Assembly: GCA_965285935.1 (NCBI GenBank) | Contig: OZ260663.1 | Coordinates: forward strand, 68,572,001 to 68,636,000 | Source of the DNA: Ophelia neglecta | Taxonomy: Eukaryota | Direction of reading: 5' to 3' | DNA length: 64,000 nt | Shown here: positions 22,091-55,440 of the stretch, in pieces | Layout of the letters: every line of letters begins with the position of its first letter | How positions within the stretch are numbered: position 1 is the stretch's first letter | Notes under the pieces: model-generated | The model's database searches: none | What the model saw: only the letters and a program-made list of their open reading frames with translations | What the model was told of the DNA's origin: nothing | Translations under genes and position numbers: made by a program

Positions 22091-25000
22091 TTAAACACTT
22101 TTCTTGACAGTGGCATTATATGGAACATACCCATTGGAGTTTAATTCCTGATGTTTCTTTGCATTTCCATTTTGTTCATGAATTGCTGCAGTTCCATTTT
22201 TAAGCCCATTTTGGTGTTCTTTAATGCTCATACTTTGTGCCTCATGCTTTTTTTTATTCCTCATGATGTAAGCATGAATGTAGAAGTTGGTAAATAGGAC
22301 AAGCATGAAGACCATGTAGCCTGCTAACAAGTTCTTTCCCCAACGAGGAAATTCACAACCGCTGACAATGGAGTAACTGGAATGTGTAAGTGTGATGCAG
22401 AACTGGATCTGAAAAAAAAATAATGCCCAAATCAAACAAACCTTGGGAAACAAATGGCTCCCACAAATTTACAGGGATATTCAGTATTCAGATTTACAAC
22501 CCCTTTTTTCCCCAACTTTGACTTAACACAAGAGGGACCTTGAAAATTACATTGCACTTGTATCATTAAAAGTATCCTTCCAGACAATTTTATTCCTTTG
22601 TTATTCTAAATTTAACCTTGAAATTCAACAGCACTTTTGCCATTGCAGGGTATCATTTCCTAATCAACTTGCAACAAAGACGATTATTGCAGTGGATAAG
22701 GCCCCAATATATCTATCTACCGGTATATATAATTTGTCTGGTGGAAAGCAAATATTTGTGTCATATTTCTTCTTACCAAACATCAGACATTCAATAAAAC
22801 CTGTTTACTAGGTTTATTAATTCTCCATATTTAAACATATTGTTCATTTAGCTCAATTAACAAAGTTGAAGTACTTACCAGTTGTAATTGGGTTATATAA
22901 TGTTTAAACCACAGTTTGCCTTTTAGGGAAGGAATCACTGATAATCCGTAATAAGTATACATCACTACGTGCACAAAACAGTTTAGACAACTCCCAAAGT
23001 ATGCTGAAATAGACAGAGTTTATACATTTTATGGCTATCCTAGAAATACTCTTATCTTTACTGTATACAGTTATTATACTTAAATTGAAAACCTTAAATT
23101 AAGATTTTTAATATTAAATAACTGAGCTATATTTTCTTCTATAAGCCATACTTACAGAGCCCTCCTGGTATGAACATCATCACCCACCACCAAATATTGA
23201 GCATAGACATGTGATGAAACACATGGAGGAATGTAATCTGGTTGTTCTTCTTTCGCAGCACCATCAGCACAGTGTCATTCAGCTCAATGGCCTTGGAGAA
23301 GAAATACCACCACATAACTTTTGCCATCTGAAAGAAGACTATAGGTCAAAACTGTGCTTCCAATGCCTGTGCGGAAATGGTTGATAATACTCCTTCACAA
23401 AACCTGAGCACTTATCCAGTTTTATTTATAAATAACTTGTGTTTGAGAGAAAAAAATGACAATTTTGTAAAGTTGGAAACTGGCACATTTATAATCTCCT
23501 TTACTAAATTTTGAAGAGCTAGCTTAAAGCAAACTGTGCATATAAACATCCTCTCAATGCATAATGTATGCTGACAGCTATTTCTTCGCAGAAATGTTTT
23601 AGCAGTTCATATACATGTATATTAACTTACCCGAAGCTCTTTGGGGTTATTTCTAGTCTCTTCATTGAGTGGTGCGCATAACAAACCATAATTCAGCTCC
23701 CAAGCGCTTATTACAATCTGTAAACAAAATAATGTCATTTGGGTGTGAAGAACATCAATAAGACTAGAAGTGTTTTTTTTTTAAATCCACTCTTGCTAGA
23801 GACAAAAGGGTGCGCCTCTGAATTCAATTGGATGCACAAGTTGTACGATAAGTCAGAACAGCTTATAAAAGAACACTAAAAGTATACTGATGGTGCAGCC
23901 CATCAAACTGGTCATCATGAATCTGAAAATTAGCTCTGTGCCTTTTTGATAATCATGTATATACCCCGGGAGTTATCTGTAGAAATAGTCACTGTAGGCA
24001 AAGGAACCATTAATGTTTATAGTCCCTAACTGAGGACACCTTTGCTAAACTACTCTGGTGGTATTCCTAAACAAATAAAGAGGGGAGTCCCCCAGTTCAA
24101 AAATAGGCATATCCAAATCACTGTCAGACATTAAACAGAATCAGATTTTTTATATCAAAATGAGTGGGTTATTTCCTGCATCCCAATAAATAGAAAGATT
24201 GAATTCCAAGTCACAGGAAATTGCACAGAACATTCATGAGTCAAAGTAAATGAAATGACAGACGAAAGTAAAATCTCAAGTCACAAAAACTTAAGGAGGT
24301 ATATCTGAACACATGTAAGCTGTATGTCTTGCAGACCGAATATTTTGAACAAGACAGTGCAAGAATTGTGGTGTTGGTTTTGAGTCAGATGAACACATTG
24401 ACAGCAGGCAAAGCTGGTTTGTTTAAATCTGCAGTGTTACCAAGATAGGGCATGTAGGGGCCTAGGGGGAAAGTGACAGTCTGAACTGAGCAGTCAGTGG
24501 CCCATTCTATAATACAGTGCTTCATGCCCTCTCAGTAAGGCGAGTTACCCTTCAATATGAAAAACAGACACCACGCAAATGATGCTAAGAAATGCCAACC
24601 ATGTTCAGAGTCGGTTGACTTCAACTTTGTGTCTTATCAAATAAGCAAAAGTACGCAGCCAATGACCAACCAAAATTCAAGCACCAGTATTCAACTTATA
24701 CAGGATTGTAAGTTAAACTTCCATACACTCCTGTGACTAGACACGTAAAATTAGTTTGTCTATTAACCTGTGAAAATGACTGATTAATATTACGATTAGC
24801 TGGGTAATCAAAATATACATGGACTTACCTCTACAACCATGTAAAGGGATAGGCCAACTAAGCCTAAATTGTATATCACCATAGGCCATTTCAGATCAAA
24901 AGGCTTTCGGTTTCGCATAATTTTTGTTCCCAGCCAGAGGAACAGCAGATATGATATTGTGAGCGCCCAGACATAGACAGGGTTCCTCCATAAGAGTAGC

Positions 25001-36190: not shown

Positions 36191-39100
36191 TTAGGTGGGA
36201 TGACCTGTGTTCTTTTCATTTGGATCTATCTCCTCTGGAATGGAATTACCATTAATTGCTGTGATTTGACGCACCCTCAGACTACAAGATCTTGTCAGTG
36301 GGATAGTATGGTCTGTGACATTGCCAACGGCAGTGCATCCATCTTCTGCCTGACCAATATTTGTCTCCATAGTTCCTGATAAAGCTACAGACAAAGAAAA
36401 GTCAAGTTGCATCTGTGTACTATGTCCTGATGTGGAGGGATATGGGCCAGCCACATTCTCCTCAGACATGTTTGCTTCGGTCATTTTTTTGCCTTTCTGC
36501 TTCACCCATTTGCTCTTACTTGCACTTCTCTTTGAGATGCGTTTTCGAGTTTTCTTTGATTGTTTGTCCACCTCTTCATTGTCATCATCAGCTTTGTCAT
36601 TTTTGCTTATGTTCTTTTCATTACTCGTTTTGTTTCTTTCACTGCTATCTTCATTTGCTTGAGGGTTAACAGTTTTTAACTCTAGATCAGTGCCACCTCC
36701 GGTAGAGTCCCACCTGGTGTAAGATTCACTGGAACCTTCCATTTCTTCTTCATCTTCCAGCAGCTGTGCACAGGAAATTGTGGAAAATGTATACAGAAAA
36801 GGATTAAGGGAGGAATTCACAGGAAATATGAACACAGCTATCCACATGGCTATCTTAGGGTCCACAGTTGCGCCCCGTAGAGATGTGATGCCAATAATTA
36901 TCGGAGGAATCCAGCAGGCACAATCAGTGAGAACAACTAAAGCCAGCTTGCGAGCAATTTTTGCTTCCAAGTCCCCAGTTAAACCTGTTCTTATGGCTAT
37001 GGATAGAAATACCCCTATATATCCAATGGCTAGGAATATAAGTGCGGCAAGATTAAAACCAACAAATATGGCTGTCGCATACTCCCATCCTGTTACTTTG
37101 CCCTCAGTGAGATTAAACAAGAAGCATATGCCATGCTGAATATAAGTGTTTTTTCCAAAGTAATTTAGATTTATTATAGGAAGCATACTTAATATGCCCC
37201 AAATGAGCCATCCAATAAAGGTAAAGGCCTTGATTGTGCGCCTACCAAAACCTCGCTTACCAAAACCAATTACGAGCACTCTGTCTGCAGTGATCAGAAC
37301 TAAAACATATACTGACATCTCAGAGGAGAGCATTGAAACAAAACCTGCCAACTTGCAAAAAAGAGACTTCCTCCATGTGGCATCATACAAATAATAAACT
37401 CCTCTGTAGTGTAAATCAGCCCCGGCAATAATAAGCAGATAAATACCCATTAGCAAGTCTGCAATGCCTAAATTTTGAATAAGGAATGACAAAGGTGTTG
37501 TCTCTTCCTTTTTCTTTCTCCACATAATTACTCCAAGATTGCCCAAAAAGGCAACCAATGCCAATCCCCAAATACCAAATCGGAGATAGACACTGGCCAT
37601 TAAATCAGAACAGGTGGAATATTCTGTTGGAGGATGAGTACATGCGTCCACATGTGTGGCAGCACAACAGAACTGAAACCCAGGAGTGAAAAGCACATCC
37701 AAACTAAGGAGCTTAAGAAAAGTTTTCTCGTGGACTAACTCCAAAGGGTTAAATCTTAGGTCTAGAAATTTCAGAGATTTCAAACCTTGTAGAGCATACT
37801 CTGAAATGTATGTGATTTGATTGTAAGAAAGATTCAGGTATTGAATTCTTGACATGCCGGAAAATGCGTTTGCAGCAATTCCTTTAATGGCCAACATTTC
37901 CAGGTGGAGTTGAGGAAGTTGATGTAAACCATAGAAAGAAAACCCATCCACATTTTTTATAGGGTTCTGGGTCAGATCCAGAAATCGTACACCTGGGAAA
38001 GATGTAAAGAGGTATGTGGTTAATGAAGAAATGTGATTTTTTGACAGAATCAAGTCCCACAGGTTTCTCAGCACCCTGTCAGGGTCAGCTGATTGAGCAG
38101 TGGGAGAGTTGAATCCGTACTGGATATCCTTTTCTGAAATACCATTTTCAGTAAGATCTAAGCGAAACAATCTAGGAAAATATCTATAGAAGTTTGGAAG
38201 GAATGGAATTTGATTCCTGGGTAGTAGCAGGATTCTTATTTCTTCAGGCAACTGAGGAATGGTGGTCAATCCTTGTTCTGCACAGCTAACAGCCATTCCT
38301 TCACACTGGCAACCATTTGGACATTTATATCGACAGTTGGCTTCGTCAAACCCACTTTCACAGTCCTTCACTCCGTCACATAGGCCATCCAGTGGGATGC
38401 AGGCAGAATGAGAATTGCACCGAAATTTTCCATCACATTTAGTGTCCAACACATCTGGCTGCTGAAATGGAAACTCGTCACACAGCATTTCATCCTCACC
38501 AAATGGACATGTGTTGTGACCATCACACACTCTGTCCATCTCAATACAATAACTTTTGTAGCATTTAAACATTCCTGGGCACACAGCTTCTTCACAGTGG
38601 TCAACTGTAGACTGGCCTGGCCCTTGACAGAGCAATTGGTTGTTGAATCTCAGCACACATGCACTGCTTCGTGGATAGCATTGGTTGGCATCAGGCTGTT
38701 TTATAGCATCATTGCATGCCATGTGGTGTGGGTTGTAGACACTGCATGTCCATGATACATTTGCAGATATCTGAACACACTTTTGCTCTATTAATCTGGC
38801 AGGGTCATGGGTAGCTAGCAACTCCTTAAAGGGGCATGTATCTTTAGGGCCACACCCCCAAAGCATGCAGTAGTCACAGTCTTTTTCATCTAGGCCACCA
38901 GTGCATTCTGCTTGGTAGTTACATAACTCTGCTGGTGAAATGCATTTGGTCTTGTCACAGGTTAATGCAGAATTCTTAGTGCACATTGGCACTAGGTTCC
39001 AGACACATTGTTCATCAGAATTATCACGGCAGTTTTTTTCCTTATCGCAAACCTGTGAACCATGAATTATTTCACCACTCTTACATTTGAAGTGCATCGT

Positions 39101-40144
39101 GCCTACTAAAGACTTTCTTTGATGAAATACATATGTGATATTTCTAGTCTCCTTGTCCCTTTGAACAAGCACCTCTGTTTCCCAAAGTGCGGACTGGTTT
39201 GTGAGTATCTGCTCATCACAGTCAACCTCATCAGTGTTTTGGGGGCAATGAGAGACTCCGTCACACCAGAATTGAGCCAGAATACATGAACCGTCGGAAC
39301 AGGTTTTGAAATCAATTGGACAGTTTTTTGGTTGGTTGTCTGTCGAAATGGAGGCAGTTTGGCATAACACATGCTGGGTGTCTTCTGGTTTCACTATTGC
39401 TTTGCAGTTGGCCATCTTTTCAATCTCCCATGTGGTCAGATTTAATTGATCTATTTTTGATACTAGTTTATGACATGCAGTGTAATTGCTGTCTGTTTTA
39501 TTTGTGGTGTTATCTTGTTGTTGATTATGCAATGGAGTAGCAACCCATACTGCCCCGTGTTCTTTTTTATGACCCCACATGATAAATACCTTGTTTACCC
39601 ATTCTAAATCTTTATTTGATATGACTGCTGTCTCTCCGCCATATCTCTTACACAACATGCTAGCTACGGATGGGTCAAACTCCTCTGAGTGTGGTAAAAA
39701 GAAAGGATGATTGTAGGAAAACAACATATAGCATTTAGAATGGTAAGCTTCCCAGTCACGACCACACTCTAAGTCTGATTGTTGTCTTCCCACTAAATTT
39801 TGGCTTATGTTGCTTTGTAGTAAACCCAAAATTATGTCATTTTTTTCCTTTTTCAATTTACTTCTCTCCAGGGTGTCAGTTTCATCTGTTCCATATTCAC
39901 ACACCACCCCCATATTTGGATTGCTCCATTCACCTGGAATTTTGACCCATCTTGTATTGACTTGGGGTGTGTAAACTGCCATTGCAACTTTGTCATTATG
40001 GCTGTGATGCATTCCAAAGAGTTCTTGATGATTAATTCTTGTCCAGTTTGTGGAGACAGTCGGGTACATCTGGTCACCCCATTGGGTTTGGTACCATTCA
40101 GCAAAGGTCAACAGGCCACCCTCAGACCATTGGAAGTTATGAGT
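36191..40144 (-). CDS. GRL101-like LGR GPCR, coding exon 2 (end of CTL1, CTL2, LDLa repeats, LRRNT, LRRs, 7TM, long C-tail; 1317 aa)
   Basis: Acceptor TTTCAG|ACT CAT at 40144 is in frame with the 1306-aa ORF. LDLa repeats (CSDGSCILAQFWCDGVSHCPQNTDEVDC etc.), CPNGCQC LRRNT, LxLxxNxI repeats, FCC..CSDLM hinge, NLGIADLLMGIYL, ITADR, CWIP and NSSLNPFLY. Confidence 0.95.
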   Translation of the reverse strand, partial: THNFQWSEGGLLTFAEWYQTQWGDQMYPTVSTNWTRINHQELFGMHHSHNDKVAMAVYTPQVNTRWVKIPGEWSNPNMGVVCEYGTDETDTLERSKLKKEKNDIILGLLQSNISQNLVGRQQSDLECGRDWEAYHSKCYMLFSYNHPFFLPHSEEFDPSVASMLCKRYGGETAVISNKDLEWVNKVFIMWGHKKEHGAVWVATPLHNQQQDNTTNKTDSNYTACHKLVSKIDQLNLTTWEIEKMANCKAIVKPEDTQHVLCQTASISTDNQPKNCPIDFKTCSDGSCILAQFWCDGVSHCPQNTDEVDCDEQILTNQSALWETEVLVQRDKETRNITYVFHQRKSLVGTMHFKCKSGEIIHGSQVCDKEKNCRDNSDEQCVWNLVPMCTKNSALTCDKTKCISPAELCNYQAECTGGLDEKDCDYCMLWGCGPKDTCPFKELLATHDPARLIEQKCVQISANVSWTCSVYNPHHMACNDAIKQPDANQCYPRSSACVLRFNNQLLCQGPGQSTVDHCEEAVCPGMFKCYKSYCIEMDRVCDGHNTCPFGEDEMLCDEFPFQQPDVLDTKCDGKFRCNSHSACIPLDGLCDGVKDCESGFDEANCRYKCPNGCQCEGMAVSCAEQGLTTIPQLPEEIRILLLPRNQIPFLPNFYRYFPRLFRLDLTENGISEKDIQYGFNSPTAQSADPDRVLRNLWDLILSKNHISSLTTYLFTSFPGVRFLDLTQNPIKNVDGFSFYGLHQLPQLHLEMLAIKGIAANAFSGMSRIQYLNLSYNQITYISEYALQGLKSLKFLDLRFNPLELVHEKTFLKLLSLDVLFTPGFQFCCAATHVDACTHPPTEYSTCSDLMASVYLRFGIWGLALVAFLGNLGVIMWRKKKEETTPLSFLIQNLGIADLLMGIYLLIIAGADLHYRGVYYLYDATWRKSLFCKLAGFVSMLSSEMSVYVLVLITADRVLVIGFGKRGFGRRTIKAFTFIGWLIWGILSMLPIINLNYFGKNTYIQHGICFLFNLTEGKVTGWEYATAIFVGFNLAALIFLAIGYIGVFLSIAIRTGLTGDLEAKIARKLALVVLTDCACWIPPIIIGITSLRGATVDPKIAMWIAVFIFPVNSSLNPFLYTFSTISCAQLLEDEEEMEGSSESYTRWDSTGGGTDLELKTVNPQANEDSSERNKTSNEKNISKNDKADDDNEEVDKQSKKTRKRISKRSASKSKWVKQKGKKMTEANMSEENVAGPYPSTSGHSTQMQLDFSLSVALSGTMETNIGQAEDGCTAVGNVTDHTIPLTRSCSLRVRQITAINGNSIPEEIDPNEKNTGHPT

Positions 40145-41808
40145 CTGAAATTGTTGAAATTAAGTCAGTTTGTAGTATTGGTTAATGTCTACTAGAGTGA
40201 CAATTCTACGTAATGTGACTTGGAATTAAAGTTATAAACAAGTGAATTTTCAGTGACCAGTTATCAAATTTATAGAATATCTTGATTCTTTGAATTAAAA
40301 AAAAACATTTTGAAGTTGAAAATTCATGCTTGTTATAAGATAAATCTGAATTGTAAAAAAATGATGTTAAATTGAAATTTAACTGAAAGTACGATATTTG
40401 AAGCTGGCCTAATTGAATGCAATATTTTCTAAGAAGGAGAATGAGTCCCTTGCATCTAATTATCAATAAAGAAATATATATGATCAGTCACTTTTGATGG
40501 CAATTAAAATTGTCAATCAAACTTTGCTAGTGCAACATGTCTTTTTTCATTGGGGAGACAAGAACTTGCTTTATATATTTTTAAATCACAAAACAATTCA
40601 ATACTGCACCTAATGGTTACCATGATAATCACATATCCCTGTCCGGAGAGCTACCAGCAATGGTGCTTTTTTACAGTCTCAGGGTCAAGAATAATTATGG
40701 TTTCATAATTATGCACCTTGAATTTTGTTGGGTTTTCAATTTTTTGTTTCATACATACAACTTTATAAGAGTTTATAATAGTCATGGGTGAAGCCCCCAC
40801 TTCAGTGTGGAAGAGTTAGCCCAAATATGGGTGGTGCAATTGACTTGAAAGTTATAGGAAATACAGGAGTGCAAACACGACACCAATGTTAGTTTTTCCA
40901 AATTTGAAATGCAATTAATTCAATTTTTCTGGTAAAAAAGACCAGTTTTCAAAATGAAAAGTCCGTATGGGCAAGGCATTAAATTTAAAAACCGAAAATT
41001 GAAATCATTTCTTCTTTTGGCACCCATGGTTTTCTTTTTTGGAGCAAATTCCAATACTTTGCCTGGCATGTCCCCATGCACTTTACATGGAGAAGCTGAA
41101 GAGTGTGTTGTTATTGATCATGATAATGCAGCCATGCGTAATAACTCTTAATCAGACTTGGTCTTGCCTTGATTTTGAAGTTTGCCTCATTATTCTAATA
41201 AATGATAGAGTTTGTTTCTGTCTGCTTGCTTTTGGTTAATATCTCTGGATGACACAAAAAAAAGAGAGATACTAGTAATCAGATGTAAAGACTACAGGCC
41301 GACATGTTAGCATGTTGTTTAGTTCCCAGTGTGAACGACAAAGACTTCAAAGATGGCATAGTGACAGTGGTAATTGAACATGCCCGGGATCTAGCATGAA
41401 CAACAAAAGATCTAGCTAGCATTCATGAGTTTTGTGAAGAAAATGTGACAATACTAAAAACATTTATTTATAATAAGTTACCATAGCAACCTAAAATAAA
41501 ATATGCTCATAATTTTGTATTGGGCGGAAGAGTTGATATTAAAGCAATGCAACCAAAGCTTAAGACTCCAGCCTACTGGGGATAGGCAGGCACACTGTGA
41601 CAGTTGCTGAAACTGTGGTTAGCTGTGTGGGAAATCACAGTCTGCTATAATCAAATATTACTTTAGTGGACATTACAGTTGGCAATCTGACAAGGAAACA
41701 TTGATGGTAATAATAATTATCAATGAAAATTGTTCAGACAAGAGTAATGATTGTTAGTTATATGATCCTGTGTTTTTTTTATTTTGTAGTATTGGGCAAA
41801 GCCTCATC

Positions 41809-44800
41809 ATGAGTGATCCAAGGCAAGAACTGGCCGAAAAACTGGACAGAGAGCTTGATGAATTCCTTCAAGAGAGCATCAACAATCCCAGAGGACCAGC
41901 AATGGATCAGAGTTTTCTTGACATGGATCCGGAGACATTAGCAGCGGTAACTGTGTTCACCATATTTTCTGACTTTCCAAATGTTTCAAAGACAAATATA
42001 TGGTGATCTGCAATGAGTTCAATATGATACTACTGCCAGTGCCACCTCAGACATATAAATTGCTGTTAACTTGGCAACTGCAGTTGACCTTGACTCACTA
42101 CATGTATAGAAATTTCTTGCATACGAGTTACTTGTCTTTTTCAATTTTAACAAAGGACGTAATAAAGCTACAGCATTAGTCAGGGGGTCTGCGTTAGACT
42201 ACTCTTTTTTCTGTGATATGCACCCACCTGGCATTTAACATTTATGTGTCCCAAAAAGAAATGAAATAAATCCCACTTCCATCTTTATGCTTAACACTTT
42301 CACTGCCAATGTCAACTTTTCTTGAGAATATGTAAGCTAGCAATTATGTAAGTTGTACTAAGTAGCATTGCCAATACAGTTACTTTGGCCAATGCTAGAA
42401 AATTCCAAACATAGGTTAAAATGTTACCTATGGACTTTTCGGAGTAGATATACCCTTGAATAAGTTAATACCATGTTGGCTAAACTGAAAGATTTACAAA
42501 TATATATGGAAATAAATTGGCACGCATAGATATGCACCTAGGATAACCTTTAGCGGTGGAAGAGTTTAAAACCCCAAAACCTAGGGAAAATCGTCAAATT
42601 GAAAGATTTAGACAGAAAAAAGGGATAGTGCTTATTAAACCATTGAAGCATCTACTAAGACCATGGTGCTCATATTTTGTATCATCTGGTTAAGATACTT
42701 GGTGACTTTACTTCAGGTTTCTAACTGTCTTGATATTAATTGTTTTAATTAACAGGAACTCAAACAACATCCAGCTTTCATGACTGACTTTGACGAAAGC
42801 AAACCCTTGTCTCCTGCAATGCAAGGACTGCAAGCTCTGAAATACGAGTCGGACTCTGCTGAATGTGTGTACCTTTTGAGCTTACTGTAGAGTTACCAAT
42901 TTGTAATCATAACTTTTGACCGTATGGTGTCAGGAATAACCATGTTAGTATTAAATAAAGATCTTACTCTTGTACATGTATTTGTACATAATAACCATAC
43001 AGATGAATGCATGACTGGAGGATTGTATATTATTATACTGGTACCACTCTTTTCTGTCAGAATGGTAATACTGACTGTGTGAATGTGATTTCTGAGCAAA
43101 GTATTAAGCTTAAAAAAATAATGGTTGAGGTTCTCGTCAGAACTTTCTCTATGAGTGATGCCAGCGGCCAGTTTTTATTTCTTATTTGACTTTGTTTTTA
43201 ATTGTTACATGTACAATATATAATTACTTTACTTTTTGACATAAAAAATGGAAAACTTTCGATTGTTTATATAAATTAGGACATTGCCCATCGGGGGGTT
43301 TGTCACAGGGTCTTTCATTGTTTGGGACATGTGTGTCCCAAGAGGAGAAGGGTAGTATGGAAATATTCAATATTTATTTACTATGTTTTATTTTTTCTTA
43401 TTTTTTGAATTGCAGTTAATGCCACCAGTTACAAAGAAGACGGGAATCAAAATTTTCAGAAAAAAAAATACAGATGGGCAATTGATAATTATACAGAGGG
43501 AATCAAATTAAAAACCAAAAATAAAGAATTGAATGCCATTCTGTATACAAATAGAGCTGCAGCTCACTTCCATTTAGGTAAGATGCATTCCTATTTGGAA
43601 TTTATGCCTCGTTCTCAGTGGTTATGCATTAATGTCATAGACATGTGAGAAAGTCATGTGCAGATGGAGCATTGCAAATTCATATTTGTGATATTGTGAT
43701 ATTCATTTATACGTATTCATTTCAGGGAACTTCAGATCTGCATATAATGATGTGATATTTGGAAGAAAGTTCAAGCCAGACCACAAAAAGGCTATAAATC
43801 GGGGTAAGCTGTTCTAGTCACAAACCTACATCCCATCCTATATTAATCTCAGTCCTAGTGAAATATTTAAAATGAGCATTCTCTGCTGGCTTTTGTGATT
43901 CACTGCCCAAATTGTTTTCAGATGAGAGAGTATTCAAAATGGCTTGTTGTTTTCATTTTATCATAAAACAGGTGCCCAATGCTGTATGGAATTAAAGAAA
44001 TATGACATGTGTGTGAAATGGTGTGAAGACGGTTTACTGGTGAGTCATTACTTAAGTAAAATATGCTTTGATTTAGGTTTGAGAAGGTGTCTGCATTAAG
44101 GTAAAGAACATGCAGGTAAAGCACCGTTTAATCTTGTTTATTCAGAAATCGTGCCTTAAATTTAGAATTAGAAATGTATTCTTATGTCATTATTATTAAG
44201 TTTTGTGTTTCTCATGTCCTATGACCAAAAATATAAGGTCGGTAGGTAAAATGCAAATATTGCAAAAATTATGTATGCTTAAATAATGTTTTGAATTTTA
44301 TATACACTGTGTGTTATATCCAACAATTTTAATCACCAAAAGGAACTGATGTTTAATTAATTGTTTGATTGATTATAAAGAAAAAAATAGGGAACAATTT
44401 TCTGTAAGTGCAACATTGTATTTTTGACTGTTATTGCAATGTGCAATTGGTATTTTATTATTGAAAGATACTTGTAATATTAGAAATGTGATATTTGTTT
44501 TTTGATGTTTCAGTAGTGTACTACAAATATCTTATATACAAAAGAGGATTTTCTCCTTTTGAACTGAAATTCTATGTGTTAACTGATGACTCATTTGCTT
44601 ATGAAATAATATTTAAACTTTGATATCAAAAGCTCATGAATCCACTTACAGTTAAGGTTACATGTCATTGAATATATATCATCACTTCTTCAAATAACTG
44701 AAACAAAATAATAAGTATTTATTAAGGCCATAGTTATTTGATTACTTGGTTTACGGATCTCCTGAAAACTACCGACTCAAAGAAAAAAATTGCCATTTGG

Positions 44801-47800
44801 CACATTTCTTAAAATTTACCACCGACTGTAAAGTCACGTCTTTAAATATTTTGTCAGCCGGGTTTTGTCATTGACATTTTAGTTTGACCAAAGCATATCC
44901 AAGGGCCCCGTTGTATTATCTGTGCACGAGAGCAAATCTGGAGAACATAGATTTTTTCAACGTGTGGCAGGCGAGGAAACTGTAAAAGATGTTAAGTTTT
45001 GTGGGTGTGATTTTTTCCTGACAAATTAGGCCAAGAAAATCCGTAAACCAATTAATCAAATAACTATGGCCTAAGGATATCCACCAAAAATCATTGCTCA
45101 GACTATTCTCAATTAAAAGTGATCTCTTAAGGATATCCATCAAAAAAATTATTGCTTTAATACAACTCTGCATAAAAAATGCATGTGGGGGCACTTTATT
45201 ACTCAAAATTTTCTGGGGGTGGAGGGGATGCCCTCTCCTTTAACCCTTTGTATGCCATGATTCCTGCAATACTTGTTGTTGAGTGAGCTTGATGCTTTGA
45301 CCATTGACATCTGTTCTTCACTTTGCAGCTGGATGGTAAAGACGACTTTTTCCTGAATCTTCGAAACAAGGCAACTAAACTGAAGGCATGATCATGTATA
45401 AGTATATTAAGTGTATATGTTTATATGCATCTGGAAAGATTACTGAATCTGCTATGTAATTTCTAGTCTAATGTGGCCCTAAATGGTTCATAATTTGTGT
45501 GACTGCCACAAAATTCATAAAACTGGACAATTTATAAGGTCAAATTCTTGATTTCATTGGTACTCTAACACTGATCCACAAACATTTATTGTGCCATATA
45601 ATTGTAAGCTATTCCTATCATAACATTTTAGTTCCAGTAATCAGAGGCATAGTTATATTGTCTCATTATAACTGTTAGATTTTTAACGTAAATATACAAC
45701 ACTGTAGGTAGTTGAATTCCTCATCATGTAAACCCAGCTATTATCTTATGATCATATTTCAGAAAGAACAGGAGAGAGATCGAAGAAAGGCTTTGGCCAA
45801 TGAAAGAAAACTAGAAGCAGAGGAAGCTAAGCTGATTAAAGTCATAATTGTAAGCTAATACAGTAACTGCCCTTATAGACATTGCACTGCTAATATAAAG
45901 ACACACTAATTTTTTCACCAACAAAGTTGCCGTCTGCTATAAAGCCCCCACAAATCTTAATGATGAAATCAGACGACACCCTTTTATAGCAATTTTGAGT
46001 CCTACTATGTTAGTTTATGTCATTCAAAATTATTCTTGAAATAAACCCTTTATTTGATTGACTAAATATGAAAGTTAGAGATACCTCAGGTCTCTTTGAA
46101 AAAATACCTGTTAATGGAGGCATTTATACCAGGAAGCCTCCTTAAGGAAAACTCATAGCAGCATGAAACAGAAATTATTACAAATTGGTCAGTGGTACAT
46201 TTGTTTGGTTACCGATAATCACAGTATTTCAGCCAGGCATTTTGGGGATAAAGGAGTAGCTCCAATGGTAATGGCAAATGTGATTCCTAAACTTTCCTTA
46301 AAAGTTTAAATACACATAAAACTCTGGTTCCTGCTTTGCAAACAACAAAAAGGTAGTTAGTAGGATATTTAAATTTTAAATTTAAATCTCATTATTTTAA
46401 TCTCATTATTCTTTTATACTTGCACCTGTAGGAAAAAGGAATACAACTAGCATGTCCAAAAAAGAATGCAGACAAAAATGCCCTTCTTGCAAGTCTAGAA
46501 ACTCATCATCCATCTGGTGCTAAAGTCAAAATGGACGCTGAAGGCAGCTTGTCATGGCCGGTACTTTTCCTCTACCCAGAATTTGGAGAAACAGATTTCA
46601 TTGAATCCTTCCATGAAAATGCAAGGTAATGTACAGTCTTTAGTACTTCATAATTAATATATTAATTACAATTTGTAGGGATTAATGAAATAATGCTAAA
46701 AAACCTCTACATTAGACCAAAAACAAAAAATGAGCTATGAGGTTGTTTAAAGGACATGATCCTACCAAAGAAGCCTACTAAAGTAGATAAATAAAAAATT
46801 CATCAAATCAATAAAACTTAGATAAAAAAAATAAACTCTGTTGTTCAATGTGTTTAGTACAATTTAAAATATATATATTTCTGGTGAAAGACAGTGGTAT
46901 ACTCTTAGACTTTGCCCTCTGTAGTGGCTGCCAATATTAAAAATAAAGCCTGCATCTCGTATGGCAACAGGGCAAGGCAACATAAATTGGACTGGTTCCT
47001 GCCACTATTCACTGTAACAGATAATTCTCAGACACTGGAGTGGTTGAAAAAGGGGTTGGCATTTGGCAAATATCATTAACATTTTAGGGTGTGTCAGTGA
47101 TGGATCCAGGATTTCAGGAAGGGAGGGGGGGGGGGGGGGCAAATTTTCCAAGGCTGACAAGCAAATGTCTAGATTGTCCATGCTACCAACCCTCTGAAAC
47201 CAGTTTGTGTGGGTCCAGAAATAGGCACTGGTTGGGTCCCCTTTTTGGCAAAAGGGGGGCTGGTTCCCAGGGCTCCCCTGTATCCGCCACTGTGTATGGA
47301 TTATCATGAAACTGAATATTAAATATTCTCCGAAAAACCATTGTACAAAGTAATAGAGGGTACAGAATCCATGGGACAAAACAGTACTATACTGGCTCTT
47401 ATGATTCAGTTTTACTAGGAACTCATTTGCTTGTTACCTAAATCAGTTAGTTAATGGAAAAAATGAATATATAAACATAAATCCAGCTTCATTATTTGAT
47501 TTGACAATTTTCATTGCAGGTTTGAAGATCATATTAGTTTAATGTTTGGTTCAGATATTGAGCCCCCTGGCTGGGATCCAGAGAAACACTATACAGCCCA
47601 GTCCATAGAGGTAACATCTCATATAACATTCTACCCCAGTCTACCCCAGTTAATATTATGCTTTGAGGCTGGATGACAAAATCAAGGAAGAGGGGTGGTA
47701 CCCTTTATACATGTATCTGTCTCTCTGAACAATATTACCTAGCTCATCCGTCAAGAAAGTACCAGGCTACAATTAATTTTTAATTACCATTTTATCAAAT

Positions 47801-48895
47801 AACTTTTATTTATAACCCTACCTGATATGGTCAAAGCATGGAAAAGAATCCAAGCTAAACTTTCAGCAGTGACCTGTTCGATGGTCTTGCATGCACACCA
47901 ACTGTTTGATCCTTTTTACATGTACCATCCTGCAGGCAATTCAGCAGCAAAATTTTATGGATATTGACCACAATGGAGGCAGAAATAAAATCTGCCTCCA
48001 GCCTACTTACATGTATGACAGTTCAGTTGTTTGATGGTTGTTTCATCAAATTAAGACCCTTTTTTCACATTATACACACACTGTAACATATACAATTTTC
48101 TTCATCTTACTAAATGCATTGATTAATCTGATGTATAGATCCTCTATGAGATAAAAGAAGAGGAAAGACTTCATGAAGTGCCAATGTCATCTACGCTCAC
48201 TGAGGCACTCAAATCACCGGGGTGGGTACTATGCATGAAAGATTTAGGCTTGTTCATTACATATACTATCTAGTAGATTTTCAGCGTGATTTCCACTGAT
48301 TTGCAAAAAAGTATTCCCATACTAAGGAAAATACAAATTTAGGCATGTGATTGGCAGGAAATCAGTATTCATAAATTTTTTTAGATTCACTTTCCATCTA
48401 TAATGCCAAATACCTGTTGATACTCATCTTCATGTGGGAACCATTTCTTTTCAAACAAATGAAAACAGGTGAACCTTTCTTGAAAAGTACTATCAAGCCG
48501 TTTGGCCCCACAGCAGTGGACAGACTGAAGGGTCAACTACAGTCATTTCTCGTATTTAAATACAATGCACAAACCAGCTAACAATGGACCAATGAGAGTT
48601 TCAATTTAAACCAAAATTATTGTCAACAGTTAGCATGTAATAAAATAGATTATAAATCTTTAGAACTGTCACATTCACAAAAGGACAATAAGTAGTGACA
48701 AAAATGTTAATAAAACTTATATTTTAGTTTAAAAAAAATGTATGCAGTCTCCAATTTCAGTAATGCAATGTATTCGGAACTTAAAACTCTTTCATTGCAC
48801 ATTGCAGGTATGTTGTGAATGGTGGGATGCCAGGATTCTTTATTTTAGTAAAAGGTTCAACATTTGCCAAGAACTTTCATTCAAGATACAAGTAA
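41809..48895 (+). CDS. TTC4: Tetratricopeptide repeat protein 4 (TTC4/Cns1/Dpit47 Hsp90 co-chaperone), 11 coding exons, 384 aa
   Basis: Exons 41809-41946, 42756-42864, 43416-43577, 43726-43803, 43972-44039, 45329-45385, 45763-45849, 46432-46625, 47520-47610, 48139-48221 and 48808-48895 total 1155 nt. Motifs: HPAFMT, LQALKYE, TPR YKEDGN..YTEGIK..AILYTNRAAAHFHLGNFRSA, and wheel-domain WPVLFLYPEFGETDFI. AATAAA at 49002. Confidence 0.93.
44726..45071. mobile_element. PIF/Harbinger-like MITE in a TTC4 intron
   Basis: TAA|GGCCATAGTTATTTGATTACTTGGTTTACGGAT ... ATCCGTAAACCAATTAATCAAATAACTATGGCC|TAA. The ~33-bp TIR has one mismatch. Confidence 0.88.
45386..45762 (+). other. GC-AG intron of TTC4
   Basis: The exon reads ..RNKATKLK then GCA TGA (stop). 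No phase-0 GT donor exists in the exon. AAG|GCATGA joins in frame to CAG|AAA GAA CAG (KEQERDRRK). Confidence 0.7.
47095..47292. mobile_element. MITE with CAGTGGCGGAT-type TIR and poly-G
   Basis: CAGTGATGGATCCAGG ... CCTGTATCCGCCACTG with near-matching 5-bp flanks TGTGT/TGTAT. Confidence 0.7.
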
Positions 48896-49591
48896 CTAAT
48901 TACAGTACATGGTACATGCACTGTCCATAATTTATATTAGATCATTTTAACTTTGTTACATGTCAGTCCTATTTTGAAATATATATATTATATATTAATG
49001 AAATAAACAAGCTATTTATTATTGAAACAAATGTGTTACATAAGATATGTTAATTATGGTCGCCTATGTAACCTAAAACAACTGGTGTGGAATCCGACTT
49101 TAGATTTAAACAATGGTGGCAACAACTGCAGACTGATGAAAAACTATTTGTCTCAATTTTTCAAACTATTGTGGGGTTTAAAACTACTGTAATGGTAAAA
49201 ACATTTTTAAAATTTGGTACAAAGACATAATTAGGCCTATGTATATATAGCCTACAAGCCAATATGACAACTTTCATTAAATAAACCCACAGAGGCTTAA
49301 ATTGAGGCAAACAAGCATGTGAGGAGGCCTCTTTTGCCATGCCAAGTGACGAGATTGGCCTGATAAAGTTTTTAAAATCGACTTCTAGACATGAGAGGAA
49401 TTTTAAATCCACCTATGTTGTCTTATTTTAGGGGACCCTGCTACACCCACTATACCCTGTAAGGTTATTTGAGAGCATGTGATATATATTATGTGTTGAG
49501 AAACCATATTCTTTCAGAACTTGCGGTGGTCAGTTATGTGAAAAATACTTGAAAACCCCCTAAATACATTTAGTTAAAAACAAATCTTTAC

Positions 49592-52528
49592 CTTTAATGA
49601 ACGTTCAAGGCCAAGGAAAATGCCAGTCATCTGCCAGATTTGTCCCAAGTTTCCGCAATCCCCATTATTGGCAGCAACCTCCAGGACTGTTGTTAATTCT
49701 TGGGCAGAACCAATGTTCCACATGTACCCCCCACTTTTAGCACATTCCACCTCGGCTTCATTCCAACTGTCCACAATGGTCAGATTGAATTCATGACTTG
49801 CTTTGTGGTACATGTCCCCAGTATTTACCTCTATGTAACAACTGTTTGAAGTGTTTGTGGGTTTTGAGCTACTGTAGGGCAAAGCTTCAAATTTTAGCAG
49901 TCGTTGCATGATTTCCCTCATTTGTAACATTCTGTACAAATTACAGTGTAGATGCTCATGTATAACGTGTATTTCATGAGACTTGGTGAACCATTTAATT
50001 TTATCATTTGGTAAATAAGCCCATCTGTAATCTGACAGGATTTGTTCAAACTCACTTATATATCGCCTTTCTTGTAGAACAAGTCTACCATGCTGTTGAG
50101 ATCCACAGGGGTGCATTCTGGACTGACTTTCTGTCTCTATTTGAAAATAATATCCTTTTTTATAGAGTATAGTAAACTGTTGTGCTTGCTGAGATTCAAG
50201 AAGCTTTATGGTACCACATGAGCTAAAGTACAATTGGTTTCTTAGGTCGTCTAGCAATGAAACCTGCATGCAGCGCTCTGCTTCGACTCTCATAAACAAA
50301 CTGTTTATTGGTTTCCCGTGTTTACATGTTGAAGAGACGGAAACACGTACGTTATTAGTTATGACATGTCCTTCAGATGAGCTTTCTTGAGAATCAATGC
50401 TCACAGAGAAGAAGCGCCCATGGCTTGTGGATTGTAGCTTGAAAACATCTTTACATTCGTCTGACACCTCTAACTGGCTTGGCTTTGGGCCAGAAACTGA
50501 GAGTGGAATCCAGGAAGCAAAGTAATCTGCAAAAGGGCCAGGAGATCTCACTCTTGTCCTTTCCGGCTTTGGAACAGGCTGCTCATATACCCACTCTGAA
50601 CTCGTTTTCCACCTCTTGATTTTGGTCATTGCAATTGCAGCAAGGAGCTGATATGTTTGGGGAGTCAGTATTTGAAGAAAAAGTTTGCCTCTGTTATGAA
50701 CTAGAAGAGGATGCCAAAAGATATACAGACAATAGCCTGCATTTACTTTTATTACCATTGAATTATCTTCGGCAGAAATAACATAAACCTCGGTGCCCTG
50801 CTCGTGAATGTGCAAACCTGGAAAAATTTGAAGCCCTTTGCATTTTGTTGTCTGCCAATCAATGTCAAGTTTGACATTATCATGAAAAGAATATGCTAAG
50901 ATAGTCAGAGTATTATATGCAGAAACATAAAACGGCATGTCTTTTAGATCTGTTGTAAAGTTTTCAAGTTCACAGAAAGGGCCAACATAATTTTTGATGA
51001 TTGACCCACTTTCCAATCCTGTGTCTATAAAAACTATCCCAGCATATGGGCACCCATCTTCCATATTGTTGGTGTATATTGTAGAAATTGAAACATGTTT
51101 CAAAAATATCTTTATATAATTTGTTTTTATAGTTGCAAATGTCTTGGTGCATTGGCCTGGATGGTTTACTGTATATTCCTTTTCTTGGTCAGAATCACAT
51201 TCTTGGTTATCATGAGGTACAGATTTTAGATGAATACGTACATCTTTTATTGCGGCAAAGTTCCTTATGTCAAAGACAGCCATTGAGACAAAAAGAGTGG
51301 ATCTAAAGATAATAAATTTCCCATAGTTTGTTTTGTTGATGGCTTGTGTACTGGAGTCTGGTCCGTCAAAAACCAAAATGTTGTTTCTAGTTGTCGGACC
51401 AAAGTTATCTCTACCATCAGCCTCATAATAGAGGTGAACATTGTCAATGTAAGAAGCCTTGATTATAAATTTAAGATGTAAGCGAGACAAAGTGATATAA
51501 TCAGCCGGTATGCTAAAGCTTTTGTCCATCGGGTTCTCTAGAGATGGTAGTCTTACGACCGGTATGTGTCCAGTAGTTCTGTCATAAAGTACTGTTCCTT
51601 TACTGATTGTGTCATATACAGCTTCAATGGTAAACTGCCTCGATGATCGGCTGTCCCCCACTTGGCTTCTCAACACAACACGTAATGTACTACTCAGAGA
51701 AATGAAACTAATCGGCAAGGCACTTTGGCACAAATTTTCCTTGTCATACCAAATTAATTGCCCTTTATATTCATTATAAACAATTACTTTTGTTCCCTCA
51801 CAGTTGAAGGTGTCATCAGTGTCAATTTTGGTGAAAGTAAGGTTTACGAGTCCAAAGTCCGAATGTATCAGCCATTTATATAGCAAGTGATCGTATTTGT
51901 CTACAGTTTTATGCATCTTGATATGTCCACAAATACTGTGAAATATGGCAAATTCCTGAAAAAAAAAGCCTTGACCATATGAGTTTTGTGATAAGGTATC
52001 TCCAAAAATTCTTTTAATATCCACGATATTGTGCTGACCAAGCTTACCAGGTTTACTGCAGTATGTGGATCTTATCAGTAATTTGCATGCTGCCAGTCTC
52101 TCCAGAACACCATTCATAACATAAAAAGGTTCTTCAAAACACAGTTTCAGGGCAGTTGATAGAATTCTCCAGTGCAGATGGTATATGTGTTGATGTAGAT
52201 TTCTGGTTTGAGAGGAGAAGCACTCTTGTTGGGTCATTTCACTGAATGACAGCAGTAGTTCCTTAGGATTTATCCCATGTGAGTTAACAATGTTGGACCT
52301 TAGCAGACACATATCACTTTGCTGTGAGCGTTTTGACCGGGTCAGTGAATGTCTTGTGGCAAAATCCTGTGTTGAGGAATGGTTAACATTATATATGTCA
52401 GTGGTACTGTCCATTTTCTTCCAATTCTGCAGTGAATTCGCCCTGCCTGTCATCAGTATAAAGAAATATACTGCCAAATACAGGACTGTGTATTTTGATC
52501 TTTCTGTCCTGAGGTGTTTGAGATTCAT
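49592..52528 (-). CDS. GRL101-like GPCR, coding exon 1 (signal peptide, ~3 degenerate CUB-like modules, first half of a C-type lectin domain; 979 aa)
   Basis: ATG at 52528 is followed by hydrophobic YTVLYLAVYFFILMTG and a furin-like RSKR. CUB-like motifs: WLIHSDFGLVNLTF..C..LC..FISLSSTLRVVLRS, VFDGPDSS, VGPFC. The exon ends WNEAEVECAKSGG..IFLGLERSLK|GTAAAG in phase 0, matching the phase-0 acceptor at 40144. Confidence 0.85.
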
Positions 52529-52860
52529 TTTACCTTGTCTGCAATGGCCTGCTAAATCATGCCTGTGACACAAGGTGTGGCTCTTTTGCTCAGCTTTCTT
52601 GAATACATCAATTTGAAATGTTCCTAATATGATTCCTGCTGTTGTACCTGTTCTATTATCCTAGACCACATAAATGTATATTAAATTACACTAAAACTAT
52701 AAGGCAGAGATGTACATGTACTACAATAATTGAAATATGAGTGTGTTTTCCACTCATATAGAATACCAGCCTGAAGAATGTACATCACATGAATATCAAG
52801 TGAAACTGGAACAGCTACTGATTGTATTACAGCTCTGTACTGTATTAAAATTTCCAAACA

Positions 52861-52874
52861 GTTGCCATAGAAAC
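52861..52874. promoter_or_regulatory. RFX X-box-like motif upstream of the GPCR start
   Basis: GTTGCCATAGAAAC lies ~330 bp upstream of ATG 52528. Similar motifs are at 41477-41490 and 57075-57088. Confidence 0.35.
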
Positions 52875-53579
52875 AATTTGTTTTCTACTTGGCATTTCAT
52901 TTCTTAAACAGGATAGATAATGTTATGCTGCAGTTTCAAACCAAGGTCTGTTTTGATCTGACAGGTAATAATGGGACCTACTATTATTATATAGTCTGGC
53001 TGGAAGCCTTGAAATAGCTTATAGCCCCATATGTTATCCATCCGTGCTTTGAACATTTTTTAAAATGTGGCAAAGTTGTTTTTATTGATATAATATGACC
53101 TACCTATTGGAAGTACCCTAAGAAAACTAAGGTTATTGTGAGGATGAAATGGTCATTTTAGTTAATGACTAAGGGAAACATTATTGCAATGGAAATTAAT
53201 ACTTTGAGGACATCAACCTGCCATGCCTCACTATACAAATATTATGTGGAAAGGCTTATTACAGTAAACTCAATCTTAATGAACTGATTTTTACTTGGTC
53301 TTCAATCAGATATTGCTAAAAAAAATGGTACTGAAGCAAAGCTGACAAATCGGAATAATACTGAAATGTATCCTCAGGACCGGAAGGTACTATAGTGCAA
53401 TTTGGTCAATTTATCTTCGATATTGCTCATTCTGATTGTTGTACAGCACCTAGTAAGCTAAAGACATTAGAAATAAGAAAACATGAATAGCTTAAATATT
53501 TTAAATTGCTTCTGCCATTAGAACCCATTTTTAAATGAGCCAAATGATGGAAATGTAATATACATGGATAAAGATGATA

Positions 53580-54470: not shown

Positions 54471-54512
54471 GCAACCCTGCTGCCATAAAACCAAGATCCC
54501 AGATGTCCCTGG

Positions 54513-55222
54513 CAAGATACCTGCTGTCCCAAGCAAGATACCTGCTGTCCCAAGCAAGATACCTGCTGACCCAAGCAAGATACCTGCTGTCCCAAGCAAG
54601 ATACCTGCTGTCCGAAGCAAGATACCTGCTGTCCCAAGCAAGATACCTGCTGTCCCAAGCAAGATACCTGCTGTCCCAAGCAAGATACCTGCTGTCCCAA
54701 GCAAGATACCTGCTGTCCCAAGCAAGATACCTGCTGTCCCAAGCAAGATACCTGCTGTCCCAAGCAAGATACCTGCTGTCCCAAGCAAGATACCTGCTGT
54801 CCCAAGCAAGATACCTGCTGTCCCAAGCAAGATACCTGCTGACCCAAGCAAGATACCTGCTGTCCCAAGCAAGATACCTGCTGTCCCAAGCAAGATACCT
54901 GCTGTCCCAAGCAAGATACCTGCTGTCCCAAGCAAGATACCTGCTGTCCCAAGCAAGATACCTGCTGTCCCAAGCAAGTTACCTGCTGTCCCAAGCAAGA
55001 TACCTTCTGTCCCAAGCAAGATACCTGCTGTCCCAAGCAAGATACCTGCTGTCCCAAGCAAGATACCTGCTGACCCAAGCAAGATACCTGCTGTCCCAAG
55101 CAAGATACCTGCTGTCCCAAGCAAGATACCTGCTGTCCCAAGCAAGATACCTGCTGTCCCAAGCAAGATACCTGCTGTCCCAAGCAAGATACCTGCTGTC
55201 CCAAGCAAGTTACTGCTGTCCC
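54513..55222. repeat. 21-bp minisatellite, ~33 near-identical copies
   Basis: Unit CAAGATACCTGCTGTCCCAAG with rare single-base variants and no spacers. Confidence 0.97.
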
Positions 55223-55440
55223 AGGCAAGACTGCTGCCATTAAACCAAGATACTTGATGTCCTGGACAATCCGGTTATCATTAAACCAAGAAATGTAATG
55301 CCATAGGCCTCTCTGCTGCAATTAAACCAAGATACCTGTTGTCCCAGGCAGTCCTGCCGCCAGTTTACCAAGATAATTGATGTCCCAGGCAGTCCTGCTG
55401 CAATTAAACCAACATATGAGATGTCCCTGACAGTCCTGTT
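55222..55440. repeat. Older degenerate ~41-bp tandem repeat related to the 21-mer
   Basis: About 5 units resembling GGCAGTCCTGCTGCAATTAAACCAAGATACCTGTTGTCCCA, with related units at ~54100 and 54471. Confidence 0.75.

What the first reader, a model, noticed from the sequence alone, without database searches (positions are those of the whole stretch)
40145..49591. Entire 11-exon housekeeping gene TTC4 nested antisense in the only coding intron of the GPCR
Seen: all TTC4 coding exons and its AATAAA (41809-49007) occupy about three quarters of the 9447-bp intron. The usual pattern is a small intron-poor gene nested inside a multi-exon host. Here it is reversed: the ancient multi-exon gene is the guest and the intron-poor receptor is the host. 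Because the intron splits a single CTL domain, either TTC4 moved into a pre-existing intron or its arrival created one. Constitutive TTC4 transcription should collide with GPCR transcription (inference).
Basis: partly seen in the sequence, partly recalled or inferred. Interest (0 to 1): 0.75.

Follow-up and report, generated by a model that had tools for sequence, protein, structure and literature searches.

The report
TTC4 gene nested in receptor intron
A complete gene for the chaperone helper TTC4 lies backwards inside the single coding intron of a large receptor gene, an ordinary gene-within-a-gene arrangement in which an old, normally short intron has grown to hold the guest.

Summary
On the minus strand, two open exons (52528-49592 and 40144-36191) of a GRL101-like LDLa/LRR/7TM receptor are separated by a 9447-bp phase-0 GT-AG intron. 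That intron cuts a C-type-lectin-like domain. On the plus strand the intron holds a TTC4 gene: an 11-exon model, 41809-48895, with AATAAA at 49002. Its Wheel-domain exon is the only such match in the 762-Mb genome.

New here: the intron is older than the nesting. Three paralogues in this genome have a phase-0 intron at the homologous lectin position (332, 549 and 1213 bp). So do three relatives' contigs (362, 676 and 1559 bp), and one relative's protein carries a 258-nt read-through insert there. None holds TTC4. This rules out "its arrival created the intron": TTC4 came to lie in a pre-existing intron.

No RNA run was found, so splicing of the host, expression and any transcriptional collision remain untested. 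TTC4 exon 6 is weak, and exons 10-11 lack independent database support.

Nested antisense multi-exon genes are common in animals. The scan has also noted at least eight in this genome, and the receptor itself (s1-734101). This is an ordinary new member of a known kind, with a clean evolutionary polarity.

The parts
49592..52528 (-). Receptor coding exon 1 (979 aa). It starts with a signal-peptide-like Met and ends with the N-terminal half of a C-type-lectin-like domain. Donor AAG|GTAAAG.
   Evidence: (residues 919-951 match positions 10-42 of a lectin profile built from homologues)
40145..49591 (-). Receptor intron: 9447 bp, GT-AG, phase 0.
36191..40144 (-). Receptor coding exon 2 (1317 aa plus stop). 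It holds the C-terminal half of the lectin-like domain, LDLa repeats, LRR, a rhodopsin-type 7TM and the tail.
   Evidence: residues 2-85 match profile positions 73-149
41809..41946 (+). TTC4 exon 1 (ATG; 46 codons; donor GTAACT).
   Evidence: No database hit alone.
42756..42864 (+). TTC4 exon 2.
   Evidence: No database hit alone.
43416..43577 (+). TTC4 exon 3 (first TPR, of the Hsp90 co-chaperone type).
   Evidence: TPR_1, E 5.7e-6; Hop, RPAP3, and CNS1 6hft_A at E 2.6e-6
43726..43803 (+). TTC4 exon 4.
   Evidence: No hit alone.
43972..44039 (+). TTC4 exon 5 (TPR helix).
   Evidence: (TPR_1, E 0.043, weak)
44146..44175 (+). TTC4 exon 6, tentative: 30 nt, phase 0/0, good acceptor, weak donor GTATTC.
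   Evidence: Unverified; the model stays in frame without it.
45763..45849 (+). TTC4 exon 7 (charged linker).
46432..46625 (+). TTC4 exon 8 (start of the Wheel domain).
   Evidence: PF18972, 27.6 bits; 6hfo_A, E 6.3e-14; only copy in the genome
47520..47610 (+). TTC4 exon 9 (Wheel domain continued).
   Evidence: Wheel positions 33-63, E 0.036; 6hfo_A residues 84-109, E 1.3, colinear with exon 8
48139..48221 (+). TTC4 exon 10.
   Evidence: No hit alone. The assignment rests on frame, splice sites and my recollection of the TTC4 C-terminus.
48808..48895 (+). TTC4 exon 11, with its stop at 48893-48895.
   Evidence: No hit alone.
49002..49007 (+). AATAAA, 107 nt after the TTC4 stop and 585 nt before the receptor's donor site.
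44725..45072 (.). MITE-like element (39-nt terminal inverted repeats, 92% complementary) inside TTC4 intron 6. Very high word depth in DNA runs.
   Evidence: I1; depth 1144-2927 in bin 44629-44800
40810..41211 (.). Repeated segment between the receptor acceptor and the TTC4 ATG. Short-read contigs break here.
   Evidence: depth 177-427 against about 12-34 beside it; contig ends at 40929/40910

Best explanation
This is a genuine antisense nested gene pair.

The host is a two-coding-exon GRL101-like receptor with a large ectodomain, a C-type-lectin-like domain, LDLa repeats, LRR and a 7TM. Its family carries an old phase-0 intron in the middle of the lectin-like domain.

In this lineage that intron is 9.4 kb instead of about 0.3-1.6 kb. 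It contains the genome's only TTC4 gene (an Hsp90 co-chaperone of the Cns1/Dpit47 type), with its own start codon, 10-11 exons and a poly(A) signal, on the opposite strand.

Shown: the anatomy, the identity of both genes, that TTC4 is single-copy, and that the intron is shared and therefore older.

Inferred: the two receptor exons are spliced across TTC4. TTC4 reached the intron by a DNA-level rearrangement; it has introns, so not by retroposition. The two genes are transcribed independently from their own promoters, as is usual for nested genes.
For: 1. Anatomy and phases.

2. Receptor domains. Of the 108 relatives found, many carry GRL101-like or relaxin-receptor names given by their sources.

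3. The junction lies inside a lectin domain. The Lineus homologue P0025 has Pfam Lectin_C at 234-376. Residues 72-126 of the last 130 residues of exon 1 align to P0025 236-290, which projects the exon's end to about residue 294. Exon 2 residue 2 aligns to P0025 296. In a profile built from four homologues, exon 1 covers positions 10-42 and exon 2 covers positions 73-149.

4. The same intron occurs elsewhere. Of 4 own-genome paralogue loci examined, 3 have GT-AG phase-0 introns of 549, 332 and 1213 bp at that position. All 3 relatives' contigs that reach the position have introns of 676, 362 and 1559 bp. P0005 reads through an 86-codon in-frame insert that starts with V (GTN) and ends with Q (CAG) at exactly that point. 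Several unspliced gene calls on relatives start within a few residues of it.

5. No TTC4 exon was found in the relatives' contigs; the best hit was E 0.045 over 11 residues.

6. TTC4 identity and copy number.

7. DNA contigs of three runs tile 38800-44800, and those runs hold 88-91% of the sampled words of 44000-53000.
Against: - No RNA run was found. Neither the receptor junction nor any TTC4 junction has been seen in a transcript.
- The three DNA runs are one sample and may be the assembly's own source. Their contigs do not bridge the repeat at about 40900-40940.
- Neither lectin half hits Pfam Lectin_C on its own. The exon 1 half matches the homologue profile only weakly (i-E 0.0056 in a two-sequence search).
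- Exon 1 as a whole found no paralogue in the genome search and no BLASTP hit at E 1e-3 among 110 homologues.
It is therefore unknown how old the nesting is.
- Whether the relatives' genes are orthologues or paralogues of this gene is unresolved.
- The fourth paralogue examined (L004/L028) shows no lectin half and is uninformative.
- No flanking duplication or relic exon points to a mechanism of arrival.
Confidence: 0.85

Rival explanations
1. The two large minus-strand open frames are separate genes or gene remnants that are not spliced together. TTC4 would then simply sit between two genes.
For: No transcript evidence exists. Exon 1 has no Pfam family and no detectable paralogue by direct search.
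Against: - Exon 1 ends, and exon 2 begins, in the middle of one lectin-like domain, with matching phase and canonical sites.
- Exon 2 has no signal peptide or start of its own at the border.
- Six homologous loci (three own-genome paralogues and three relatives' contigs) show the same two-exon layout with a short intron at this point, and P0005 carries an in-frame insert there.
- The annotated homologues P0024 and P0025 are continuous across the point.
Confidence: 0.04
2. Assembly artefact: the TTC4 segment was wrongly placed between the two receptor exons.
For: Short-read contigs break at a repeat near 40900-40940 and at a heterozygous bubble at 41941-42051. All the runs come from one sample.
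Against: - One contig joins exon 2 to 785 bp of the intron.
- The next contigs overlap end to end through TTC4 exons 1-6 (table 8).
- 88-91% of the sampled words of 44000-53000 are present in the runs.
- There are no N runs in the window.
Confidence: 0.03
3. The arrival of TTC4 created the intron. This is the first reader's second option: the receptor was once intronless in this domain.
For: None found.
Against: A phase-0 intron at the homologous position exists without TTC4 in 3 paralogues, in 3 relatives' contigs, and as an in-frame insert in P0005.
Confidence: 0.02
4. The nesting is functional. Antisense TTC4 transcription through the host intron gates or dampens receptor expression by transcriptional interference, and selection keeps the arrangement.
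For: The geometry allows converging polymerases. Interference by nested genes has been shown for some human pairs (PMC3192792, abstract and passages).
Against: - No expression data are available here.
- Reviews describe nested genes as mostly having their own promoters and expression unrelated to that of the host (PMC3325483 passage; Assis et al. 2008 as cited in PMC3192792).
- The arrangement is absent from every homologous intron that could be examined.
Confidence: 0.08

Closest known systems
Antisense nested (intronic) protein-coding genes of animals, for example the human set of Yu et al. 2005 and the roughly 800 in Drosophila
   Same: A complete gene with its own start and poly(A) signal lies inside one intron of another gene, on the opposite strand. 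About 63% of human cases are on the opposite strand (PMC3192792 passage). The counts of 158 human to about 800 fly genes come from a PMC3325483 passage.
   Different: The host has only one coding intron, and that intron interrupts a folded domain. The guest has more exons than the host. These differences are of degree, not of kind: only about 41% of human nested genes are single-exon.
2mit in intron 11 of Drosophila timeless2; LRRTM genes in alpha-catenin introns
   Same: Protein-coding guests in the opposite orientation within an intron of a larger gene. I saw the abstracts only, in the search listing (PMC3786989 and PMC3933685).
   Different: Those hosts are multi-exon genes with long introns. 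For LRRTM, the nesting is conserved across jawed vertebrates according to the abstract. Here conservation could not be shown, and the homologous introns examined are empty.
TTC4 / Cns1 / Dpit47 Hsp90 co-chaperones
   Same: A TPR exon of the Hop/RPAP3/CNS1 type, and a Wheel domain (PF18972) whose only PDB match is TTC4 6hfo_A.
   Different: Nothing unusual was seen in the protein itself. Only its genomic address is unusual.
GRL101-type LDLa/LRR receptors of invertebrates
   Same: LDLa repeats, LRR and a rhodopsin-type 7TM. The named relatives are GRL101-like or relaxin-receptor-like.
   Different: It has an extra 979-aa N-terminal exon with no Pfam family, plus lectin-like domains. That was the subject of another note (s1-734101) and was not pursued here.

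Membership tests
Nested (intronic) gene pair | All coding exons and the poly(A) signal of the guest lie within a single intron of the host. | tested here: met
   TTC4 CDS 41809-48895 and AATAAA at 49002 lie inside intron 40145-49591. The transcription start and true 3' end were not observed.
Nested (intronic) gene pair | The flanking host exons are joined in a mature transcript. | tested here: inconclusive
   No RNA run was found. Indirect support: canonical phase-0 sites, the two halves of one lectin domain, and the same layout with short introns at 6 homologous loci.
Nested (intronic) gene pair | Guest and host are independent genes, not alternative exons of one gene. | tested here: met
   They lie on opposite strands and encode unrelated protein families.
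TTC4/Cns1 family | C-terminal Wheel domain (PF18972). | tested here: met
   Exon 8 scores 27.6 bits against a cut-off of 27, and exon 9 continues the profile. The genome-wide family scan gives one over-cut-off match, at this exon. 6hfo_A, E 6.3e-14. The last half of the domain (exons 10-11) was not detected on its own.
TTC4/Cns1 family | N-terminal three-TPR Hsp90-binding domain. | tested here: inconclusive
   Exon 3 hits TPR_1 at E 5.7e-6 and matches co-chaperone TPRs including CNS1. Exon 5 is weak at E 0.043, and exon 4 has no hit. The joined domain was not searched, because joining exons was barred.
GRL101-like / LGR-type receptor | LDLa repeats plus LRR ectodomain plus a rhodopsin-type 7TM in one chain. 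| tested here: met
   Ldl_recept_a E 5.9e-25 (5 stretches), LRR_8 E 4.6e-23, 7tm_1 E 9.3e-22, all within exon 2.
C-type lectin-like domain (PF00059) at the junction | Match to the Lectin_C profile. | tested here: inconclusive
   Neither half hits Pfam alone. The homologue P0025 does (E 1.8e-7, residues 234-376), and both halves align to it and to a four-homologue profile on either side of position 71/72. The joined domain was not scanned.

The most novel reading that the evidence does not exclude
In this lineage a whole 7-9 kb genomic TTC4 unit, the only copy of an essential co-chaperone gene, was transposed at the DNA level into an ancient 0.3-1.6 kb intron of a lineage-expanded receptor gene. 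The pair is now kept together because antisense TTC4 transcription sets when the receptor can be made. That would be a natural, datable case of gene relocation into an intron creating regulatory coupling.
Probability: 0.07. Interest if true: 0.5.

Novelty: new member of a known kind. Interest (0 to 1): 0.25.

Why it matters
The case is small but clean. The intron's age is independently fixed by paralogues and relatives, so the direction of change is known: an old short intron came to hold a complete, single-copy, multi-exon gene.

That makes it a usable example for asking how intron-containing genes get into introns, and whether a host with a single intron tolerates a guest that is probably always on. 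By itself it does not change what is known about nested genes.

For annotation it matters in two ways. The receptor must be modelled across TTC4. TTC4 must not be merged with, or masked by, the host.

Tried and rejected
1. RNA evidence. The look-up of sequencing runs (kind rna) on 44000-53000 listed only three runs of one sample, none recorded as RNA. Read laying on 38800-44800 therefore shows DNA contigs only.

3. First word search with exon 2: 2 weak hits among 1822 candidates, because the words came from the divergent first 500 residues. Repeating it on residues 600-1120 gave 108 hits.

4. Third word search, with TTC4 exon 8. It came back blank: 1 candidate, none scored. Given the length window, this says nothing about full-length TTC4 in relatives.

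5. Direct genome searches with the two lectin halves and with exon 1 found only the window itself. The paralogues' split lectin domains appeared only with a profile built from homologues.

6. Pfam on the separate halves and on the short TTC4 exons gave no hits or weak hits. PDB searches for exons 10 and 11 found none.

7. Exon 6. No phase-0/0 candidate passed strict splice filters. The best relaxed candidate is 44146-44175.

8. Traces of how TTC4 arrived. No flanking direct or inverted repeats bracket the gene, only short two-copy matches. No relic receptor exon lies in the intron: ex1 and ex2 gave only E >= 1.9, and 110 homologues gave none at E <= 0.01.

9. Papers. Two reviews (PMC3380635, PMC2747821) are not held. 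A search for 'TTC4' plus 'nested' returned 6 papers, none relevant by title or abstract. From that search alone, I found no printed description of this arrangement.

10. Tools not used.
- Structure prediction and fold search: skipped because the informative queries would have been joined exons.
- Supplementary files: not opened.
Full report
**What is there**

The window is G000:C5:68572001-68636000 of a 762-Mb, 223-contig genome and has no N runs.

On the minus strand there are two very long open frames. The upstream one runs from a signal-peptide-like Met at 52528 to 49592, where the sequence reads AAG|GTAAAG. The downstream one begins at 40144, directly after TTTCAG|, and runs to the stop at 36191-36193. 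Both borders fall between codons. The gap, 40145-49591, is 9447 bp.

Exon 2 carries five LDLa stretches, LRR_8 and a rhodopsin-type 7tm_1. Exon 1 has no Pfam family. Among the 108 relatives found with the LRR-7TM part, many carry GRL101-like or relaxin-receptor names given by their sources. The closest, P0003, aligns with exon 2 up to two residues before its end. No further 3' coding exon is therefore needed. 'Only coding intron' is reasonable.

**The junction lies inside a lectin-like domain**

Neither half hits Pfam Lectin_C alone. The Lineus homologue P0025 does, at residues 234-376 (E 1.8e-7). Residues 72-126 of the last 130 residues of exon 1 align to P0025 236-290, which projects the exon's end to about residue 294. 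This alignment is weak (E 0.46). Exon 2 residue 2 aligns to P0025 296.

I built a 160-position profile from the lectin domains of P0024, P0025, P0035 and P0038. It matches exon 1 residues 919-951 at positions 10-42 and exon 2 residues 2-85 at positions 73-149. The E-values there are for a two-sequence search and are weak for exon 1. The alignment with the two exon ends as separate rows shows them abutting, around the conserved IGL motif on one side and the W-x-D motif on the other.

**The guest**

On the plus strand, stop-free segments with GT-AG borders and compatible phases give an 11-exon model. Its CDS is 1128 nt (375 codons plus stop), from the ATG at 41809 to the stop at 48893-48895, with AATAAA at 49002-49007.

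- Exon 3 is a TPR of the Hsp90 co-chaperone kind: TPR_1 E 5.7e-6. Its PDB hits are Hop, RPAP3, SGT and CNS1.
- Exon 8 reaches the Pfam cut-off for the Cns1/TTC4 Wheel domain (27.6 against 27 bits). Its only PDB hit is TTC4, 6hfo_A residues 36-81, E 6.3e-14.
- Exon 9 continues both the Pfam profile (positions 33-63) and the same chain (residues 84-109), but weakly.
- Exons 1, 2, 4, 7, 10 and 11 have no database support of their own. Exon 5 has a weak TPR hit.
- Exon 6 (44146-44175) is only the best phase-compatible candidate. Without it the frame still holds.

The Wheel exon is unique in the genome by protein search and by Pfam family scan, which gave one match over the cut-off and one at E 5.6 elsewhere. 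This is the organism's TTC4, not a spare copy.

**Is the intron older than the guest?**

A genome search with the LRR-7TM part found 31 matches at E <= 1e-10. They include a tandem array of about 1000-codon open frames on the same chromosome. I extended four paralogue loci upstream and scanned their open frames with the lectin profile.

Three of the four show the N-terminal half at the end of one large open frame and the C-terminal half at the start of the next. In each, a GT-AG phase-0 intron lies between them:

| Own-genome paralogue | Intron length |
|---|---|
| C5:92413832-92414380 | 549 bp |
| C5:90230639-90230970 | 332 bp |
| C5:98794638-98795850 | 1213 bp |

The fourth (L004/L028) shows no lectin half and is uninformative.

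Outside this genome, the 1860-aa unspliced gene call P0005 carries an 86-residue insert exactly at the junction. The insert is absent from P0024 and P0025. It begins with V and ends with Q, as a read-through phase-0 GT...AG intron of 258 nt would. Several other unspliced gene calls start within a few residues of the exon 2 border.

One metagenome-contig scan returned four loci. The three that reach the position have the same two-exon layout, with phase-0 GT-AG introns:

| Relative's contig | Intron length |
|---|---|
| L029 | 676 bp |
| L030 | 362 bp |
| L031 | 1559 bp |

None of these contigs holds a TTC4 exon; the best hit was E 0.045 over 11 residues.

The intron therefore predates the nesting and is normally 0.26-1.6 kb. 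Here it is 6 to 37 times longer.

**What could not be shown**

- No run on record as RNA holds the stretch. Host splicing, TTC4 expression ('housekeeping', 'constitutive') and any collision remain inference.
- The three DNA runs are one sample. Their contigs tile 38800-44800, joining exon 2 to 785 bp of intron and running through TTC4 exons 1-6. They meet only end to end at a repeat near 40900-40940 and at a two-allele bubble at 41941-42051. This argues against a gross misassembly but is not independent proof.
The contig of the closest relative, P0003, was not seen, so the age of the nesting is unknown.
- Whether L029-L031 and P0005 are orthologues or paralogues of this gene is also unknown.
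- No flanking repeats and no relic receptor exons in the intron point to a mechanism. Because the guest has introns, retroposition is excluded by reasoning, and a DNA-level rearrangement is inferred.

**Comparison with what is known**

Genes inside introns of other genes are common in animals.

- A review passage gives 158 in human to almost 800 in Drosophila. It says they mostly have their own promoters and expression patterns unlike the host's (PMC3325483).
- The introduction of PMC3192792 (passages), citing Yu et al. [quoted passage not shown] Citing Assis et al. 2008, it says 109 human and 752 fly pairs show no expression correlation. I could not read those two sources themselves.
- The same paper shows that interference by nested genes does occur for some pairs.
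- This scan's notes list at least eight other antisense nested genes in this same genome. They are unchecked by me.

The arrangement is a new member of a known kind. The reversed exon counts reflect an intron-poor host family rather than a new principle. A search for 'TTC4' with 'nested' found nothing relevant.

**Verdict**

The mechanism of arrival and any regulatory consequence remain open. Interest is low to moderate.

Noticed in passing
window 54492-55230 (and 55206-55438): A 21-bp minisatellite with 35 copies at 97% match, followed by a degenerate 41/82-bp array. It lies about 2 kb upstream of the receptor's start codon. It produces the long repetitive ORFs listed.
   Followed up: partly
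G000:C5 about 87-107 Mb (for example L015, L017, L020-L022): A large array of GRL101-like genes, each with an open frame of about 1000 codons and 23-25% identical to this receptor's LRR-7TM part. The one member examined has the same split lectin domain.
   Followed up: partly
window 44725-45072: A MITE-like element with 39-nt terminal inverted repeats inside TTC4 intron 6. Word depth in the DNA runs is about 50-100 times that of neighbouring sequence.
   Followed up: no
window 40810-41211: A moderately repeated segment between the receptor's acceptor and the TTC4 start. Short-read contigs of all three runs end or branch here.
   Followed up: no
window 41941-42051: Two alternative 111-letter contigs differing at 5 places in every run. 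This is a heterozygous bubble starting at the end of TTC4 exon 1 and running into intron 1 (tables 3 and 8).
   Followed up: no
window 22094-22453 (minus): An exon-sized ORF matching the C-terminal end of the ELO (GNS1/SUR4) fatty-acid elongase family, E 2.8e-8.
   Followed up: no
window 47005-47379 (minus): A 124-codon ORF with a proline run inside TTC4 intron 8, with no Pfam family. Possibly part of a repeat; not examined.
   Followed up: no
L029 and L031 (contigs JAAUYG010130857.1 and JAAUYG010077902.1): Two different receptors of this family from one assembly filed among metagenome contigs. Both have the two-exon layout, so the record evidently holds animal DNA.
   Followed up: partly
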